A stretch of 63,837 bases of DNA, counting the filler, from Guillardia theta CCMP2712 (lineage: Eukaryota > Protista > Cryptophyta): assembly GCF_000315625.1 (NCBI RefSeq). It is 6 parts of 6 records of this genome, joined end to end, with 100 filler letters (N's around TTAATTAATTAA, not from the genome) between each part and the next. Parts side by side here need not be neighbours in the genome. Positions count along the whole stretch, not along the records: positions 1 to 21,335 come from NW_005434578.1; 5 more parts are not named here. One strand, 5' to 3'. Below are positions 8,072-21,335 of the stretch, one piece after another. Under the pieces are notes generated by a model. It was not told where the DNA came from, searched no databases, and worked only from the letters and a program-made list of their open reading frames with translations. Numbering within the stretch: the first letter of the stretch is position 1; each line of letters begins with the position of its first letter. The position numbers were made by a program, and so were the translations under genes.

Positions 8072-8784
8072 GTATTAGCGTAGTTGAGATCCTCGAGACC
8101 GCGGAGTCAAAGTAGATTATTGATTGAAATCCCGTTTATCTCATTTCCTTTTCTCCCTTCACCTTCTTTGCGTGTGACACCCTAGCGATCTCGCGTGACA
8201 CGCATAAGATACAAGCAAGTCTTGATGTATTTGCACAGACATGAATAGCTACTCTACACGATTTACAGGGCTGCTCCTGCATCAGGCAGAAGCAGGAAGG
8301 AGTCTTTCTCCTGGGTCACTCAGAAGCCCCATCCTGATCCTTGACCTGCAAGGAGGTGAGCAAGGAGGGACGTACAAGGCAGGAACATTTCATCGTCAAC
8401 TTCACGGTATCAACAGTGTAACTCAACACTCAGACAAATGCCTTCAAAATAATCACGAGTAGGAGGGACCCAATCCGGCGGGAATTGGAGTACACACTCC
8501 CTCATTCTCGTCATCTTGGTCTTCATCGTGATGAGTTACGTCTGCAACAAGCACAAGCACAACCGTACAAGACAAAAGACTGTAGAGCTCAAGACTTGCG
8601 GGTCAGACAATGGATATCTTTTAACGTCATCACCGTTTATCAGTCTGACGTGCAAATCAAAAGTTTTCGTCCTCATCCCCGATCAAATAGAACGAACATG
8701 AACGATGGTTACCTTGCTGCAGGATCCTTGAAAGCGACTTCTGTCTCTGGAGGAGAAAGGGACAGAGAAAGGGAATGGCAGGGG

Positions 8785-8876
8785 GGAGGGAGGGAGGGAG
8801 GGAGGGAGGGAGGGAGGGAGGGAGGGAAGGAGGGAGGGAGAGAGGGAGGGAGGGAGTGAGAGAGGGAGGGAGGGAA
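8785..8876. repeat. (GGGA)n microsatellite
   Basis: Seen directly. Confidence 0.9.
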
Positions 8877-9913
8877 GGAGAGAAGGGGGGTGGCGGAAGG
8901 GAGGGAGACTGCAGGGGGGAAAGAGATGCTGCCTGAAGAAGAGGATTTTCTCCGCTCGTGCACGTGCGACAAAGGGGATATGAGGGGGATGATCACACTC
9001 AATACCGTACGCGGCACTGGCGGCACTCAGGTCAGTGACCGGCGGGCCGGGCCGGGCCGGGCGCCGCCGGTCACCGGGTGGCACCCGGTCACGGCACCGC
9101 GGGCCGTCAGGCTGTCACCTGACGGTCGGACCGGGTGACGGTGACCGCCCGGCCGGCCGCCGGGACTGGCAAGTGAACATTACTCAAACGGGAACTGTGA
9201 GAGTCAGTCGACGGTGGCAGTACGGTACTCTGTAACAGTGTTGACAGTGAACCCGGGCCGTTCGGCGGCCTTCCGATCACAGGCGCGGCCCGGGGCTGGT
9301 GACACTGCCACGGTGAGGCTTCAACTAGTGTATACAATGTTGTCAAATAAACCTACTATGAGCTGTGTGTCGTTGAGAATAGACTGTTGAGGTGCGGAGC
9401 TGCCCTGGCCCGTTGAGACTACCCAGTGAATGGGAAGGGAAGGAACCTCAAGAACATCCGTCACTGAGGTAGATTCGCAAAAGATTGACAGGAGGATACC
9501 TTGTCTTGCTCTTGAATCGACGTGTGTTCCTGAGCCTTTTCTGCGTACTGATGGAGCAACGAGACATATTCCGAATACTCCATAATGCCTGGCAATTGGG
9601 CTCCTTTTGATTGCTCGTCATGCAAGCATGCTGTTGTTAGAGCATGTATTCTCTGAACAAACAGTGGATCCCGCAATGGCTTCAATGACCCAGACGAGCT
9701 CCTATAAAGAAGAAATATATTCAGAATATTCGATGCTTTCCTTGAACAAAGGAGTATTAAATTACCTCGACAAGCAATTTTTTAGAAGCGATGTCCACAA
9801 GTTGAAGGTTCTTGCAGAAATATCAGGTCCCTGTTCCGCAATCAAATGCAAGATATTTTCTCCTTCAACAGCAGAAATTTCAAATCTCCTGGATATCCTT
9901 TCGACAATGCATA

Positions 9914-11854: not shown

Positions 11855-12370
11855 CTCTCAAGATCTCTCTTCTCTTCTCTCAAGATCTCTCTTCTCTTCT
11901 CTCAAGATCTCTCTTCTCTTCTCTCAAGATCTCTCTTCTCTTCTCTCAAGATCTCTCTTCTCTTCTCTCAAGATCTCTCTTCTCTTCTCTCAAGATCTCT
12001 CTTCTCTTCTCTCAAGATCTCTCTTCTCTTCTCTCAAGATCTCTCTTCTCTTCTCTCAAGATCTCTCTTCTCTTCTCTCAAGATCTCTCTTCTCTTCTCG
12101 CAAGATCTCTCTTCTCTTCTCGCAAGATCTCTCTTCTCTCAAGATCTCTCTTCTCTTCTCTCAAGATCTCGCTTCTCTTCTCTCAAGATCTCTCTTCTCT
12201 TCTCTCAAGATCTCTCTTCTCTTCTCTCAAGATCTCTCTTCTCTTCTCGCAAGATCTCTCTTCTCTTCTCGCAAGATCTCTCTTCTCTTCTCGCAAGATC
12301 TCTCTTCTCTTCTCTCAAGATCTCTCCTCTCTTCTCTCAAGATCTCTCTTCTCGCAAGATCTCTCTTCTC
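11855..12370. repeat. 22-bp minisatellite (CAAGATCTCTCTTCTCTTCTCT)n, roughly 23 copies
   Basis: Seen directly. Pyrimidine-rich unit with an AGATCT palindromic core. Confidence 0.95.
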
Positions 12371-16965: not shown

Positions 16966-17074
16966 GTTTTACTGAGGGTTGGGGGTTTACTGAGTTAGCC
17001 TAGTAGGGTTGAGGGTTGAGCCTGGCACGGTTTAGCCCGGGTTTAGGGTTGAGGGTTGAGGGTTGAGGGTTTGG
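16966..17074 (+). repeat. Degenerate telomere-like repeats (TTGAGGG/TTTAGGG variants)
   Basis: GTTTAGGGTTGAGGGTTGAGGGTTGAGGGTTTGGG plus interrupted variants upstream. Confidence 0.8.
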
Positions 17075-17272
17075 GCGATGGAGGGAGTGACATCTGCCAG
17101 GCCGGACTGAGTCAGCGAGAACTTGAAGATCAGGGAGGCGCTCGCAGTCGAGCTGACACTCAGCGGCAGGCGACGGCCGCAATTCAGCCGTGTCACCGCC
17201 GCCGCAAAACAAGCTGAAAAAGGCAACAAGGATCGGATGTAGAAGAACCGGGCAGCGGGCAGCAGCAGGGAC
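17075..17272 (+). pseudogene. Decayed internal fragment of the telomere-associated element (copy 0)
   Basis: Aligns by eye with 21036-21182, e.g. GAAGATCAGRGAGGCGCTCGCAGTCGAGYTGACA, with many small insertions. Confidence 0.8.
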
Positions 17273-17319
17273 TTAGGGTTTAGGGTTTAGGGTTTAGGGT
17301 TTAGGGTTTAGGGTTTAGG
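17273..17319 (+). repeat. Telomeric repeat tract (TTTAGGG), about 6-7 units
   Basis: Seen directly. Confidence 0.97.
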
Positions 17320-17428
17320 AGCCGGCCCTTAGTAAGAGCATGCTGCCCTGCGGCGCGTAGGGAGAGCGCAAGGGGACCGGTGGAAGCTGCGAGCAAGAGG
17401 TTCGTATAGTTCAAACAGCTTTCTAAGC

Positions 17429-19263
17429 ATGGTACTACAGTATGATGAAAGCGTTCGCAACCTGCTGTATCGGAGATCATGCCAATACACGCAGGGTGAG
17501 CGCTCTGGAGGCCACGTCGAGGAGGCCGCCGACCTCGTCGAGAAGGTGAAGAACTTCACCAAGCGTTATCCGAATAGTCGGACAGCTTATGCTTGCAGAG
17601 CTGAGGGGGGATGCACTCCCGACGCTATCGCTGAAGCCATCCGCTCGACATGTCGGCAGGCGAGACGCGACCTGTTTGAAGACTCTCTGAGCGAATGGAG
17701 CTCAGAGTCGAGAGCATGGTTTATTCAACAGATGGAGGAGGCCAAGAAGCAGAATGTCGAGACATACATCGGCACCGAAGGCACCGAGGGGACCTCCTTC
17801 ATCTCCATGACTCTCCTAGGGATTTCCTCGATGTATGTTCGACAAGAAGAAAAGTTGAAAACGAAGCTTATGGAGCTAGGTCTCATGGTAGACTCAGTCG
17901 ATGGAGTCGACAAGGCCATCATGTGGAAGCACCTTACAGACCTGAGATAGCACGAGCAGACGACATCTCAGTCACCGTCTCCTTCCTTCGGAATGAAGCA
18001 GCCATGGAGCTATGGGAAGGCAGGACAGAATACGCCATCGAAGGGAGAGTCTTTCGAGCCACAGAGGTGAGCATTGCACATGACCGGTCGTTCAAGCTTC
18101 GAGCCAAGCGAGGACCTTGGGGCAAGGGAGGGAGCCTTGCCGAGCTATCGCAGCTCTTAGCTCTTGGAGGAATGTCGACGGCTGAGATCGCTCAGATCTA
18201 TCGATTTCAGCTGCTCTCGCAATCTCTTGCAGCCGCAGAGGTACAACCACTTGCGGGCATGCTCGTGCAGGGTCCTGGGCAGAGAGGTCGCAAGGGGCCG
18301 AGCCCGAAGACGTATGTCGCTGTTGGGGCAAGTACGGGCACTCTCCAGCAAAAAGAGCTGGAGTGGGTGCTGAGCTCGCCTTCGACGGCAAGCTGCGAGC
18401 AGACCTTGGCCTCGTTCAGAGAGAGCGAGGCGATGGAGGGGGTGCATCTCACTCTCATCAGCGACGACGTCAAGCTCAGAGAGACGTTTGCCGCAGTCGA
18501 GCTCACAGCCGACACCTTCGTGCCGAGGGGAAAGATTGCCAAGCAAAGGAGGGCACTTCGCGAGAGAGATCATGCGGGGCGCAGCAGCTTTAGAGTACAG
18601 ATCAAGTCGAGGTCAAGCATGAGCACAGGCCGCTTCTCGAGGAAGGAGATGGAAGCGCTGTGCGGAGAGGGCAGGGAAGAAAGCTGGGTGCATATCCAGC
18701 TAGCCTGCAAAGAATTTGAGCTCATGATCGCTTTGGCACACAACAGAGTAATGGAGACAATCAAGGGATGCCTGACAGAAAGCTGGAAGAAGAAAAGTGT
18801 TGAACAGGAGAGTTGGTGGCAAACGCCAATCAACTCTATGACAGGGCTAGGACTGACTGCACCAGAGCACGGCAATCTTATACCAGATGGGCTCTGCTAC
18901 TTCAGAGGGAGCAATCGCATTGTGCTGGTGGAGATAGCAAGAACTTCAGAGTTCACGGGCGAGGGAAGCAGTCTGGCAAACCTGAAAGCAAAGTTTCAGG
19001 AGAAAGAACAGAAATATGCAGCACTGCGGGCAGAGATGACAAGTAGGAGCGACAACACAGAGGTCATACAAGCCACGTTCATTGCAGGAGTGAGAGGCAG
19101 TATTATGGAGCGGGAATGGACCACAAATTTCCGGAACTTGCTCATGGACGAGGATATGATTGACAGAGCCATGACCAAGATAGTCATCCAGCTGCTCGAA
19201 GTGCAACACATGCTGTGGACCTCAAGGAGACGAGGAGACACGACCAACAGAGAACAAGCATGA
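17429..19263 (+). CDS. Element ORF (frameshifted near 17930-17950): RRM-like/ORF1-like region fused to a Zn-knuckle remnant and an RLE PD-(D/E)xK endonuclease
   Basis: ORFs 17429-17950 and 17695-19263. LCGEGREESWVHIQLAC..AHNRV; IPDGLCY..IVLVEIART..KFQEKEQKYAAL..FIAGVRGSI matches the RLE pattern of R2/CRE/NeSL-type retrotransposons. No YxDD RT motif. Confidence 0.78.
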
Positions 19264-19570
19264 AGGATATAAGATGGTTGGAAGATGAAGGGGTAAATAT
19301 CAACGAGGACAGATCACAAGGGAAGCCTCAAAAGCTAGCAACCAGGATCAGCATGGCTGGGAAGGGGCAAGGACACAGAAGACAGATGGGAGACGAAAGG
19401 GCAACGGTCAACGGACAGACCGAAGGTGAAGCCTCATAGGCGAAAAACAACCAACATGGCAAGGAAGGGGCAAGGACACAGGAGACAGATGGATGACGAC
19501 AGGGGAAAGGTCAACAAGGACAGACTGACGGGGAAGCTTCACAGGCGGCAGGCGGGGAAGGGACATGGAC
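19255..19570 (+). repeat. Imperfect ~105-bp direct repeats in the element 3' UTR
   Basis: GGAAGGGGCAAGGACACAG..GACAGATGG..GGTCAAC..GGACAGAC..GAAGC recurs near 19355 and 19460, with a more diverged copy upstream. Confidence 0.75.
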
Positions 19571-19832
19571 TTAGCGCAAAAACTGGACAGGTGGACGGTT
19601 ACACTGAAACCGTCAACCCGGGCCCGGAGGAGACATGGCCGCACCGGCGGCTCGGAACTGAGGACTATGGAAACAACAGAAACAGCGAAACAACGATAGA
19701 ACCCTGGATGCCACAACGGGCCATCCAAGAAGGGCCGCTCTGCCAAGCGTGAGAACCCATTTAGACTAGACTAGACCGGGAAGGTACCCGATGCGACTAC
19801 TCTAGCATTCTAATAAAATCGACTACTACTAC

Positions 19833-19927
19833 TAGGGTTTAGGGTTTAGGGTTTAGGGTTTAGGGTTTAGGGTTTAGGGTTTAGGGTTTAGGGTTTAGGG
19901 TTTAGGGTTTAGGGTTTAGGGTTTAGG
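19833..19927 (+). repeat. Telomeric repeat tract (TTTAGGG)12 plus partial units
   Basis: Seen directly. Confidence 0.98.
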
Positions 19928-21335
19928 TAGGGCGCCGTTATTTTCGGCAGCATGGCTCCTCGTCAGGTGTAGGGGAAGCCGCCAGGGCGCCAAGGAAGCT
20001 GCAAGCAAGAGGTTTGTATACTTCAAATAGCTTTCTAAGTATGGTTCTTCAGTATGATGAAAATGTTCGCAACCTGCTGTATCGGAGATCATGCCAATAC
20101 ACGCAGAGCGGACTTGTGGATGCCTCTGTCCTCGAAGCTGATCTCGTCGAGAGGGTGAAGAGCTTCGCGAAGCGTTATCCGAACAGCAGGACAGCCCAGG
20201 CTTGCAAGGCTGTGGAGGGATGCACCCCCGACGCTATCGCAGAAGCCATCCGCTCGACATGTCAGCAGGCACGACGTGNNNNNNNNNNNNNNNNNNNNNN
20301 NNNNNNNNNNNNNNNNNNNNNNNNNNNNNNNNNNNNNNNNNNNNNNNNNNNNNNNNNNNNNNNNNNNNNNNNNNNNNNNNNNNNNNNNNNNNNNNNNNNN
20401 NNNNNNNNNNNNNNNNNNNNNNNNNNNNNNNNNNNNNNNNNNNNNNNNNNNNNNNNNNNNNNNNNNNNNNNNNNNNNNNNNNNNNNNNNNNNNNNNNNNN
20501 NNNNNNNNNNNNNNNNNNNNNNNNNNNNNNNNNNNNNNNNNNNNNNNNNNNNNNNNNNNNNNNTGAGGAGATCCCGGTGACTGTTTCCTTCCTCCGCAAT
20601 GCACAAGCGGAGAAGCTCTGGCAGGGAAGAGAGGACTTCGCGATCGATGGTCGCAAGTTCACAGCTGTACATGTGAGCATCGTGCACGATCGATCTTTCA
20701 AGATTCGAGCCAAGAGAGGACCCTGGGGCAAAGGGGGCAGCTTGGCAGAGCTGACTCACCTGCTAACCTTGGGCGGCATGACAACGGCTGAGATAGCTGC
20801 CGTCTATCGCTATCAGCTGCTGCGCCAGTCCCTTGCAGCGGTCCAACTCCAGCCGCTGGCAGGCATGCTGGTCGCTGGGGCGCCAGGACAGCAAGTCCAC
20901 AAAGGCTTAGGTCAGAAAGGCTTCATCGCTGTAGGGGCCAACGTCATCTGGAGACAGAGGGAGGTGGAGTGGATCGTCTCCTCGAGCTGCCCAGAGGCGA
21001 ATGATACAGCATTTCGAGCTTTCCGAGAGAGCGAAGCGATGGAGGGAGTACACCTGACTCTGTTCAGCGAGGACCCGAAGATCAGAGAGGCGCTCGCAGT
21101 CGAGTTGACAGCTGATCGCTTTGTGTCCAGAAATAAGTTGAAGAAGGCATCAAGGATGCAGAAGAAGGCAGGCGGCAAGGACGGCAAGGAGATCAAGATC
21201 ATCATCAAGTCGACGGCGGCATCTGGTCGCTTCACGAGGAAGGAGATGGAGGGGCTGTGCAACGGCGGCAACACGTCTATCGCAAGAGTCAAGAGAGTCT
21301 TGTTGGAGATCGCTACACAGGCTCGAGATCAACGT
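19928..21335 (+). mobile_element. Second, diverged copy of the telomere-associated element (5' part, interrupted by assembly gaps)
   Basis: Encodes MVLQYDENVRNLLYRRSCQYTQ, HDRSFKIRAKRGPWGKGGSLAEL and FRESEAMEGVHLTL, homologous to copy 1 with many synonymous differences. Confidence 0.88.

What the first reader, a model, noticed from the sequence alone, without database searches (positions are those of the whole stretch)
18600..19263. RT-less derivative: ORF1-like region fused in frame to the endonuclease at a CTGTGC (Leu-Cys) junction
Seen: copies 1 and 2 are homologous up to GRF(S/T)RKEME(A/G)LC (CTGTGC at 18658-18663). Copy 2 then continues NGGNTSIARV..., whereas copy 1 jumps into GEGREESWVHIQLAC..AHNRV, a CCHC knuckle lacking its first Cys, followed by the nuclease. 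No RT motif lies between the two telomeric tracts. Inference: a microhomology-mediated internal deletion removed the RT and kept the frame, leaving a non-autonomous element or a stand-alone telomere endonuclease. Copy 2 may be the autonomous partner, with its RT hidden in the gap.
Basis: partly seen in the sequence, partly recalled or inferred. Interest (0 to 1): 0.82.

Follow-up and report, generated by a model that had tools for sequence, protein, structure and literature searches.

The report
Dead chimera of two telomeric retroelements
The "RT-less endonuclease fusion" is a single, recently formed and already frameshifted hybrid between two different retrotransposon families that both live inside this protist's telomere repeats; the hybrid is ordinary, but its parents (a dual-endonuclease LINE and abundant ORF1-only partner elements) form a notable telomere-specific community.

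Summary
Copy 1 (window 17320-19834) lies between two (TTTAGGG)n tracts, has no RT, and switches at 18666/18667 from an ORF1-like frame into a CCHC remnant plus nuclease.

It is not an internal deletion of one element.
- The 5' 1.35 kb is 90-99% identical to about 30 copies of a 2.3-kb family (A1). Their intact ORF (717 aa) is an ORF1 homologue, and they never carry an RT.
- The 3' 1.17 kb equals the end of a roughly 10.5-kb LINE (B1). B1 has a 703-aa ORF1 that is only 30% identical to A1's, and a 2500-aa ORF2 with weak C48 peptidase, APE, RT, CCHC and an R2-type RLE. That is the Dualen architecture.

The junction is unique in the assembly. Four public runs (contigs only) do not bridge it. A private 1-bp deletion at 17926 breaks the frame.

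Four other 5'-truncated B1 copies exist, and three carry foreign or self-repeated 5' heads. RT template switching is therefore the likeliest origin.

Copy 2 belongs to a second ORF1-only family (A2), not to an autonomous partner.

The wider picture is the interesting part. ORF1-only lineages are under purifying selection and outnumber the RT copies (at least 357 first-look ORF1 candidates against 47 RT matches). They share 3' tails with Dualen-like LINEs inside telomere arrays.

The parts
16970..17077 (+). Degenerate telomere-like repeats (GGGTTGA and similar) at the inner edge of the subtelomeric array
17075..17158 (+). Short fragment of an A2-like ORF1 gene (79% identity to A2 positions 1210-1284). 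The remnant runs on to about 17272 and is capped by telomere repeats.
17273..17319 (+). (TTTAGGG)6.7 tract, ending in TTTAGG at the 5' junction of copy 1
17320..18666 (+). 5' part of copy 1, derived from ORF1-only family A1. It holds one 20-nt 5' repeat unit (17320-17339), the 5' UTR and ORF1 codons 1-412.
   Evidence: blastn against about 28 A1 copies at 90-99% identity, with homology ending at 18667-18670
17429..17950 (+). What is left of the A1-type ORF read from its real ATG: 173 codons, then a stop caused by the frameshift
17926..17927 (+). Private 1-bp deletion (one A missing from GGAAAG), which shifts the frame
   Evidence: Alignment A1. 25 of 25 other copies are intact. Most public contigs carry the extra A, and part of run X12 lacks it.
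18664..18669 (+). Chimeric junction: A1 up to 18666/18667, B1 from 18667
   Evidence: Contigs of 4 runs diverge exactly here.
18667..19263 (+). Last 198 codons plus stop of the B1 (Dualen-like) ORF2. It holds the CCHC remnant (His 18691-18693, Cys 18706-18708) and the RLE core (PD 18883-18888, E 18931-18933, R 18940-18942, K 19003-19005, Y 19015-19017).
   Evidence: 198/198 aa identical to L036 ORF2 residues 2303-2500. Invariant columns in alignment A3. Model and R2 fold matches.
19264..19834 (+). B1 3' UTR. It holds a 103-nt repeat x1.9 (19352-19547), a conserved terminal block, AATAAA (19813-19818) and a (CTA)4 tail (19823-19834).
19835..19927 (+). GGG plus (TTTAGGG)12 tract between copy 1 and copy 2
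19928..21335 (+). Copy 2: the 5' 1.4 kb of an ORF1-only A2 element. There is an N gap at 20279-20564, and the piece is cut at its edge. It is 99.7% identical to the L033 copy.

Best explanation
Copy 1 is a one-off, young and non-functional hybrid of two different telomere-specific non-LTR retrotransposon families.

The two parts:
- Its 5' 1,347 nt come from A1. This is a 2.3-kb element that encodes only an ORF1-type protein.
- Its 3' 1,168 nt are the end of B1. This is a roughly 10.5-kb Dualen-like LINE with ORF1 and an ORF2 carrying APE, RT, CCHC and RLE.

Both families insert sense-strand-on-G-strand into (TTTAGGG)n. They share a 3' end: a conserved block, AATAAA and a (CTA)n tail.

Most likely mechanism (inferred):
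1. A B1 reverse transcriptase primed on a nicked C-strand and copied the last 1.17 kb of a B1 RNA.
2. It then switched template onto an A1 RNA. A1 RNA was probably in the same particle, because A1 depends on B1's enzymes.
3. It copied that RNA to its 5' end.

The join happened to keep the frame. A later 1-bp deletion, or one inherited from the template, broke the A1 reading frame. No ORF1-RLE fusion protein is therefore expected from the natural start codon.

Shown: the two-family origin, the unique junction, the frameshift, the domain content of the parents and the R2-type fold of the nuclease.

Inferred: the template switch itself and the dependence of A1 on B1 in trans.
For: Two-family origin:
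- blastn of copy 1 against 67 loci places about 28 A1 copies on copy positions 1-1351 and 14 B1 copies on positions 1348-2513. No other locus has both parts.
- A 120-nt junction probe matches in full only at the window. About 30 places match its first half only and at least 9 its second half only.

The parents:
- The intact A1 ORF is 717 aa. It is collinear with the 703-aa B1 ORF1 at 30% identity, E 1e-75.
- B1 ORF2 is 2500 aa. Pfam finds APE (33-36 bits) and RVT_1 (122 bits) above their cut-offs, and zf-RVT (17-19.5 bits) and C48 below theirs.
- B1 ORF2 is collinear with a 2666-aa homologue that carries C48, RT and RNase H.
- The C-terminal domain has invariant C, C, H, C, PD, R, K and Y in 30 homologues. 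Its model has pLDDT 93.7. The best PDB folds are R2 proteins (E 4e-9, TMq 0.71).

State and age of copy 1:
- The frameshift is private to this copy.
- The copy is young. It has 1 private substitution in 1344 nt of the A part and 2 in 1166 nt of the B part.

Support for template switching:
- Of the four other 5'-truncated B1 copies, L006 is fused to an A2 ORF1 with a 14-nt inverted duplication.
- L014 is fused to the 5' repeat units of another family.
- L013 has its own first 20 nt repeated 4-5 times.
- Only L009 is a plain truncation.
- The last 160 nt of A1 and B1 are 75-78% identical, and both end in (CTA)n.
- Template jumping by non-LTR RTs and chimeric retrocopies are documented (PMC8857657, PMC2104539).
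Against: - No independent read support. In four public runs, available only as Logan contigs, the contigs stop at 18667/18670 and continue as the A or B parent. No listed contig bridges the join. Such contigs drop rare variants, so this neither confirms nor refutes.
- A deletion between a neighbouring A1 and B1 in a head-to-tail array would give the same structure. Such neighbours exist, for example on contig C39.
- Classical template jumping runs end to end. Here the acceptor point is internal to A1 (position 1347), which needs a broken acceptor or donor RNA.
Confidence: 0.75

Rival explanations
1. The chimera arose at the DNA level. An A1 element and a B1 element lay next to each other in the array. 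Illegitimate (end-joining or replication-slippage) deletion removed the 3' kilobase of A1, the telomere tract between them and about 9.4 kb of B1. A variant of this is a 5'-truncated B1 insertion with an accompanying upstream target deletion.
For: - Elements lie head to tail, and A1-then-B1 neighbours exist. On C39, A1 is at 589105, the B1 RT at 591342 and the RLE at 594423.
- A short shared GTGCG / GAG lies at the join.
- Arrays show frequent erosion and healing, so breaks are common. About 28 of 51 telomere-tract starts follow something other than a canonical 3' tail, and several of those follow 3'-truncated elements.
Against: - It does not explain by itself the 20-nt self-repeats at the 5' end of the truncated B1 copy in L013.
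- Both halves are equally young. That fits one event but does not decide between the models.
Confidence: 0.3
2. The junction is an artefact of cloning or assembly in a highly repetitive scaffold end. A chimeric clone, or collapsed A1 and B1 repeats, would have been joined by the assembler.
For: - The junction is unique in the assembly.
- No listed contig from 4 public runs bridges it, and the contigs continue as the parents on either side.
- The scaffold has N gaps nearby.
Against: - The two parents share only a few nucleotides at the join, so an overlap assembler has no reason to join them there.
- Other independent A::B and head::B chimeras exist at other scaffold ends with different junctions.
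- The copy has normal 5' and 3' telomere junctions and its own private changes.
- Part of the depth in run X12 lacks the extra A at 17926, as in this copy.
Confidence: 0.12
3. A microhomology-mediated internal deletion of an autonomous element produced a propagating non-autonomous element or a stand-alone ORF1-RLE telomere endonuclease, with copy 2 as the autonomous partner.
For: - The join keeps the frame downstream of 17927.
- The RLE catalytic residues are all intact, 100% identical to the active-looking B1.
Against: - The 5' part is from another family, whose ORF1 is 30% identical to B1's.
- There is only a single copy.
- A private frameshift is present.
- The first zinc ligand is lost.
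- The copy-2 family has no RT.
- A second A::B chimera (L006) has a stop codon right at its join, so keeping the frame here is what one chimera in three would do by chance.
Confidence: 0.04

Closest known systems
Dualen / RandI LINEs (Kojima & Fujiwara 2005). Cryptophyte Dualen elements such as Dualen-1_GCr are described in PMC5029228, and the clade is defined by APE plus RLE in PMC9977147.
   Same: The donor of the 3' part (B1, and its 55-58% relative B2/P0001) has an APE N-terminal to the RT. It also has a C-terminal CCHC plus PD-(D/E)xK restriction-like endonuclease, and a weak C48 (Ulp1) peptidase signal at the N-terminus, as in cryptophyte Dualens.
   Different: - No RNase H is detectable between RT and CCHC.
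- No SET domain was seen.
- A separate 700-aa ORF1 is present.
- Every 3' end examined lies in (TTTAGGG)n. I found no report of telomere-specific Dualens.
- The RT phylogeny was not done.
HeT-A / TART / TAHRE of Drosophila telomeres (own knowledge)
   Same: Gag/ORF1-only elements without an RT (A1, A2) coexist in head-to-tail telomeric arrays with RT-encoding relatives. The ORF1-only ORFs are under purifying selection (dN/dS 0.16-0.27). They outnumber the RT copies: at least 357 first-look ORF1 candidates (150 scored) against 47 RT matches.
   Different: - Here telomerase repeats persist between the elements.
- The elements point their 3' ends toward the chromosome end. That implies endonuclease nicking of the C-strand, not end-priming.
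- The LINE clade is different.
TRAS1 / SART1 of Bombyx mori (PMC7265360)
   Same: These are sequence-specific LINE insertions into telomerase-made repeats at fixed positions. The 3' ends abut the repeat.
   Different: They belong to the R1 clade with an APE only, have poly(A) tails, and are not known for ORF1-only partner lineages.
MoTeR1 / MoTeR2 of Magnaporthe oryzae (Starnes et al. 2012, cited in PMC4640811)
   Same: An RLE-type telomere-repeat-targeting LINE is paired with a shorter RT-less relative that shares its ends. The arrays are interspersed with telomere repeats.
   Different: They belong to the CRE-like clade without an APE. MoTeR2 is not an ORF1-only element.
Chimeric retrocopies made by LINE RT template jumps (U6-L1 type; Magnaporthe tripartite pseudogenes, PMC2104539; R2-type RT template jumping, PMC8857657)
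   Same: A 3' piece of a LINE is joined directly to a 5' piece of another RNA. The product is flanked by normal target junctions and has little or no microhomology.
   Different: The acceptor here is another retroelement of the same telomeric guild, and the join lies inside both coding regions.

Membership tests
Dualen/RandI LINE (applies to B1, donor of window 18667-19834) | APE-type endonuclease N-terminal to the RT in the same ORF | tested here: met
   PF03372 at ORF2 residues 447-630, 33.2-35.9 bits against a cut-off of 24.5. Collinear with the APE region of P0076.
Dualen/RandI LINE (B1) | Reverse transcriptase domain | tested here: met
   PF00078, 121.8 bits, residues 1165-1418
Dualen/RandI LINE (B1) | C-terminal CCHC zinc knuckle plus restriction-like (PD-(D/E)xK) endonuclease | tested here: met
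   Invariant C69, C72, H81, C86, P145, D146, R164, K185 and Y189 in 30 homologues. AF2 model pLDDT 93.7. The top 7 PDB folds are the R2 C-terminal region, E 4e-9 to 2.5e-5.
Dualen/RandI LINE (B1) | RNase H between RT and CCHC (present in described Dualens and in homologues P0023, P0040, P0057 and P0076) | tested here: not met
   No Pfam RNase_H hit at E up to 1 on ORF2 segments. No BLASTP similarity to the RNase H region of P0040. It is either lost or diverged beyond recognition.
Dualen/RandI LINE (B1) | RT falls inside the Dualen clade in a phylogeny with reference LINE clades | not tested
   No reference clade sequences were at hand. The only related evidence is 30% identity over 536 aa of RT and thumb to P0076, which carries C48, RT and RNase H and whose APE region aligns collinearly with B1.
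Cryptophyte-type Dualen (PMC5029228) | C48 (Ulp1) peptidase domain upstream of the APE | tested here: inconclusive
   PF02902 scores 17.2 bits, below the 20.7 cut-off, at residues 145-256. It is precomputed as a weak hit on P0001. The region aligns with P0076, which passes at 29 bits.
Propagating non-autonomous derivative family (applies to copy 1 itself) | Several genomic copies share the same internal junction | tested here: not met
   Only the window holds the junction.
Functional R2-type RLE module (copy 1's C-terminal part) | Complete CCHC knuckle and an open frame from a start codon | tested here: not met
   The first Cys is deleted and the second is replaced one residue out of register. 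The frame is broken at 17926. The PD...E..R...K...Y core itself is intact.
ORF1-only telomeric partner element, HeT-A-like in function (A1 and A2; the 5' part of copy 1 and copy 2) | Encodes an ORF1/Gag homologue and no RT, lies in telomeric arrays, and has a conserved ORF | tested here: met
   - ORFs of 715-717 aa are collinear with the ORF1 of B1 and B2.
- No Pfam RT is found.
- Telomere repeats lie at both ends.
- dN/dS is 0.16-0.27.
ORF1-only telomeric partner element | Mobilised in trans by the RT of the partner LINE | not testable with these tools
   The only indirect evidence is the shared 3' end. A1 and B1 are 75-78% identical over the last 160 nt and both end in (CTA)n. A2 and B2 both end in (ATA)n.

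The most novel reading that the evidence does not exclude
Copy 1 may be a snapshot of how this telomeric guild evolves. In a cryptophyte-like genome that still uses telomerase, chromosome ends are built from Dualen-type dual-endonuclease LINEs and several long-lived ORF1-only lineages that depend on them. This would be a HeT-A/TART-like partnership that arose independently. Frequent RT template switching between co-packaged RNAs would create new RT-less lineages, swap 3' tails between partners, and generate the family-specific 20-nt 5' repeat heads.
Probability: 0.4. Interest if true: 0.7.

Novelty: new variant of a known kind. Interest (0 to 1): 0.45.

Why it matters
The hybrid copy has no likely function. 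Its value is that it led to its parents.

As far as the searchable literature shows, telomere-repeat-specific LINEs of the Dualen clade have not been described. Nor have ORF1-only partner lineages outside Drosophila-type telomeres. [quoted passage not shown] The size of that genome (87.2 Mb) matches this assembly (87.15 Mb).

If the organism assignment holds, these elements were missed because they sit only at chromosome ends.

The system would allow tests of three questions:
- How a LINE with two endonucleases picks a telomeric target.
- How RT-less Gag-only lineages persist.
- How erosion, telomerase healing and retrotransposition together shape chromosome ends.

Tried and rejected
- Pfam on the fused ORF and on its C-terminal 200 aa gave nothing significant.
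- A sequence search of PDB with the last 500 aa of ORF2 gave nothing.
- The protein atlas gave only unnamed eukaryotic clusters, one of them with zf-RVT.
- The word-index protein search found a single relative, P0001.
- An AF2 model of the 717-aa ORF1 protein from 6 sequences was poor (pLDDT 51.6, pTM 0.29). It was not used for fold search, so the ORF1 fold remains open.
- Reads were available only as Logan contigs. They break at the junction and cannot decide whether it is real.
- Exact-match scans of JGI metagenome contigs found nothing for the junction 34-mer or for the parental A1 32-mer. Since the parent is also absent, the blank is uninformative.
I could therefore not fetch a complete A2 copy with both ends, nor the contig lengths needed to prove that every copy is terminal.
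- dN/dS on the RLE of copy 1 is meaningless. It differs from the nearest B1 copy by 1 nt in 594.
- I considered priming of B1 reverse transcription from an eroded A1 end and rejected it, because it would place B1 in the opposite orientation.
Full report
**Setting.** The piece is the right end of scaffold C96 of an 87.15-Mb, 669-contig eukaryotic assembly.

From about 16970 onward it is a subtelomeric array:
- degenerate telomere-like repeats;
- an 84-nt+ fragment of an ORF1-type gene;
- (TTTAGGG)6.7 at 17273-17319;
- copy 1 at 17320-19834;
- GGG(TTTAGGG)12 at 19835-19927;
- copy 2 from 19928 to the edge of the piece.

The G-rich strand is the + strand, so the chromosome end lies to the right. 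Both copies point their 3' ends toward it.

Two corrections are needed. First, the 522-codon ORF 17695-19263 is not a gene model. Intact relatives start at the ATG that corresponds to 17429 and read in one frame for 717 codons. Copy 1 lacks one A at 17926, so that frame stops at 17950. The first ~77 codons of the 17695 ORF are out-of-frame text. The deletion is private, since 25 of 25 other copies carry the extra A.

Second, the breakpoint is at 18666/18667, not at CTGTGC itself.

**Two parents, not one.** I ran blastn of copy 1 against 67 loci fetched from the same genome.
- About 28 copies of one family (A1, 90-99% identity) cover positions 1-1351 of the copy.
- 14 copies of another family (B1) cover positions 1348-2513.
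- No locus other than the window holds both parts.

A 120-nt probe centred on the join gives the same answer. It matches in full only at the window. About 30 places match its first 60 nt only, and at least 9 match its last 61 nt only.

**Family A1.** It is a 2.3-kb element made of one or more 20-nt 5' repeat units, a 717-aa ORF, a roughly 400-nt 3' UTR and a (CTA)n tail. It sits between telomere repeats. Pfam finds nothing in its protein.

**Family B1.** It is about 10.5 kb long.
- It starts with up to 15 copies of a different 20-nt 5' repeat.
- ORF1 is 703 aa.
- ORF2, nine nucleotides later, is 2500 aa.
- Its 3' UTR ends in the same kind of tail.

ORF2 holds the following domains:
- a weak C48 peptidase signal;
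- an APE domain (33-36 bits, cut-off 24.5);
- RVT_1 (122 bits);
- a zf-RVT knuckle (17-19.5 bits, below its 27.5 cut-off);
- the C-terminal domain that copy 1 carries.

The last 198 residues of B1 ORF2 and of the copy-1 ORF are identical.

The A1 protein is collinear with B1 ORF1 from end to end, but only 30% identical (E 1e-75). Copy 1 therefore cannot have come from B1 by deleting its middle.

**The nuclease.** An exhaustive HMMER search with the last 270 aa of B1 ORF2 found 106 proteins at E < 1e-3. In the long ones the domain is C-terminal and lies behind RT, RNase H and zf-RVT. Single hits also carry an APE-type or a C48 domain.

An alignment of 30 homologues has these invariant columns: C, C, H, C, then PD, R, K, Y. 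The AF2 model is confident (pLDDT 93.7). Its seven best PDB matches are the R2 retrotransposon proteins (E 3.9e-9 to 2.5e-5, TMq 0.58-0.71). PD-(D/E)xK cap-snatching nucleases follow.

APE and RLE in one ORF is the stated hallmark of Dualen/RandI (PMC9977147, PMC5029228). Cryptophyte Dualens are also described with a C48 peptidase (PMC5029228).

B1 departs from that description in having no detectable RNase H. The RT phylogeny was not done.

**The junction.**
- Family A reads ...GCGCTGTGCGGAG|GAGGTAAC.
- Family B reads ...CCATGGTGC|GAAGGCAGGG.
- Copy 1 reads ...GCGCTGTGCGGA-GAG-GGCAGGG.

The overlap is at most 1-2 nt, plus a nearby shared GTGCG. The B-type Glu codon differs by one synonymous base.

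In B the knuckle is CPWC-x8-H-x4-C. In copy 1 the first Cys is lost and the second is supplied by the A-derived Cys, one residue out of register.

**Age.** Copy 1 has 1 private substitution in 1344 aligned A-part sites and 2 in 1166 B-part sites, plus the 1-bp deletion. Its RLE coding part differs from the C15 copy by 1 nt in 594. The event is recent, and dN/dS on this RLE carries no information.

**Independent support.** The 24 runs offered are all kept as Logan contigs, and I laid four of them on the stretch. At 18667 the contigs run on as family A (GAGGTAACACATCG...). At 18670 they arrive from family B (...CCATGGTGCGAA). No listed contig bridges the join.

Because such contigs drop rare variants, the single-copy join is neither confirmed nor refuted. 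At 17926 most contigs have the extra A. In run X12 about a third of the summed depth lacks it. Scans of JGI metagenome contigs found neither the junction nor the A1 parent.

**How the chimera probably arose.** Five B1 copies are 5'-truncated:
- L009 starts directly after telomere repeats, as a plain truncation.
- L013 starts with its own first 20 nt repeated 4-5 times.
- L014 is joined to four 5' repeat units of another family.
- L006 is joined to an A2 ORF1 shortly after the position homologous to the window's join. It has a 14-nt inverted duplication and a stop codon at the join.
- The window copy is joined to A1.

Foreign or reiterated 5' heads on truncated copies are what RT template switching produces (PMC2104539, PMC8857657).

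A1 and B1 also share their last ~135-160 nt at 74-78% identity and both end in (CTA)n. A2 and B2 both end in (ATA)n. This fits A RNAs being used by B enzymes, and so lying next to B RNAs during reverse transcription.

I put the odds as follows:
- template switching, about 0.45;
- a DNA-level deletion between neighbouring A1 and B1 elements, about 0.3 (such neighbours exist on C39);
- an artefact, about 0.12;
- a functional fusion, about 0.04.

That the frame is kept is what one chimera in three would do by chance. L006 does not keep it.

**Copy 2 and the wider community.** Copy 2 is 99.7% identical to the A2 element in L033. That element's ORF (715 aa from the ATG) ends without an RT.

The ORF1-type query finds at least 357 candidates in the genome. 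All 150 scored hits have E < 1e-65, and most have open frames of about 750 aa. Neighbouring copies lie about 2.7 kb apart near contig ends.

By contrast there are 62 RLE and 47 RT matches. Thirteen B1 RT segments are identical in protein.

ORF1-only ORFs show dN/dS of 0.16-0.27, both within A1 (dS up to 0.30) and between A1 and A2. These RT-less lineages are therefore old and selected, not debris.

Of 51 distinct telomere-tract starts in the fetched loci, about 21 follow canonical (CTA)n or (ATA)n tails. About 28 follow other sequence. This includes many elements truncated at their 3' side and ending in G-rich letters. That pattern is expected from terminal erosion followed by telomerase healing.

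A full B2 element lies on a 10.7-kb JGI contig. It has 5' repeats, a 712-aa ORF1, a 2573-aa ORF2 and an (ATA)n tail, and it runs into TTTAGGG.

**Organism.** This is an inference. The assembly size matches the 87.2 Mb given for the Guillardia theta nucleus (PMC4007541). The C48-APE-RT-CCHC-RLE layout is the one described for cryptophyte Dualens (PMC5029228). [quoted passage not shown] I could not verify the species directly.

**Verdict.** The interpretation as an internal-deletion derivative or a stand-alone endonuclease is not supported. Copy 1 is a dead, single-copy hybrid of an ORF1-only element and a Dualen-like LINE. The telomere-specific guild it belongs to is the finding worth following.

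Noticed in passing
L031:1-300, L033:2380-2440 (minus strand), L068:1-40, window 17320-17339 and 19930-19951: Every family and subfamily starts with its own 20-21-nt unit, in 1 to 15 tandem copies, directly after TTTAGG. At least eight different units were seen. The copy number differs between copies of the same family.
   Followed up: partly
L013:1144-1270: A 5'-truncated B1 copy has the first 20-27 nt of its own remaining sequence (an internal ORF2 stretch) repeated 4-5 times at its 5' end. This suggests the 5' repeat heads are made de novo at or after insertion.
   Followed up: partly
L006:1890-2080 (minus strand): This is a second, independent ORF1::B1 chimera. An A2 ORF1 is joined to B1 ORF2 about 1.57 kb from the B1 3' end. 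A 14-nt inverted duplication and a stop codon lie at the join.
   Followed up: partly
L062, L007, L032, L056, L057, L058, L054 (telomere-tract starts listed); window 17159-17272: Many elements are cut off at their 3' side and capped directly by (TTTAGGG)n at G-rich letters. This is expected if chromosome ends erode into the terminal element and are healed by telomerase before the next insertion.
   Followed up: partly
L013:780-838, L042, L029, L030, L068:10680-10731 versus window 19800-19837, L043:3100-3152: Two tail types exist. A1 and B1 end in (CTA)n, and A2 and B2 end in (ATA)n. Both follow a shared TCTAATAAA motif, which hints at partner-specific 3' end recognition.
   Followed up: partly
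L068 (JGI sample 3300016466, contig Ga0186760_100687, 10731 nt): A complete B2 element sits on a separate public contig. The contig begins at the 5' repeats and ends two telomere units into the next element. Whether the contig is DNA or a read-through transcript is unknown.
   Followed up: no
L013:858-1126: A short mosaic: one partial A2-type 5' repeat unit is joined to an RT-domain fragment of a B-type ORF2 and then to other sequence, and the whole is capped by telomere repeats.
   Followed up: no
window 21300-21335: Copy 2 has one extra base (GCTACACAGG against GCTAACAGG in L033) just before the edge of the piece. It shifts the frame and is possibly low-quality sequence at a gap edge.
   Followed up: no
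window 11855-12353, 8780-8907, 166-320: Unrelated tandem repeats lie in the unique part of the window: a 22-nt unit x23, (AGGG)n x32 and a 51-nt unit x3.
   Followed up: no
window 19352-19547: The B1 3' UTR contains a 103-nt unit repeated 1.9 times. Most nucleotide differences between B1 copies lie in this part of the UTR.
   Followed up: no
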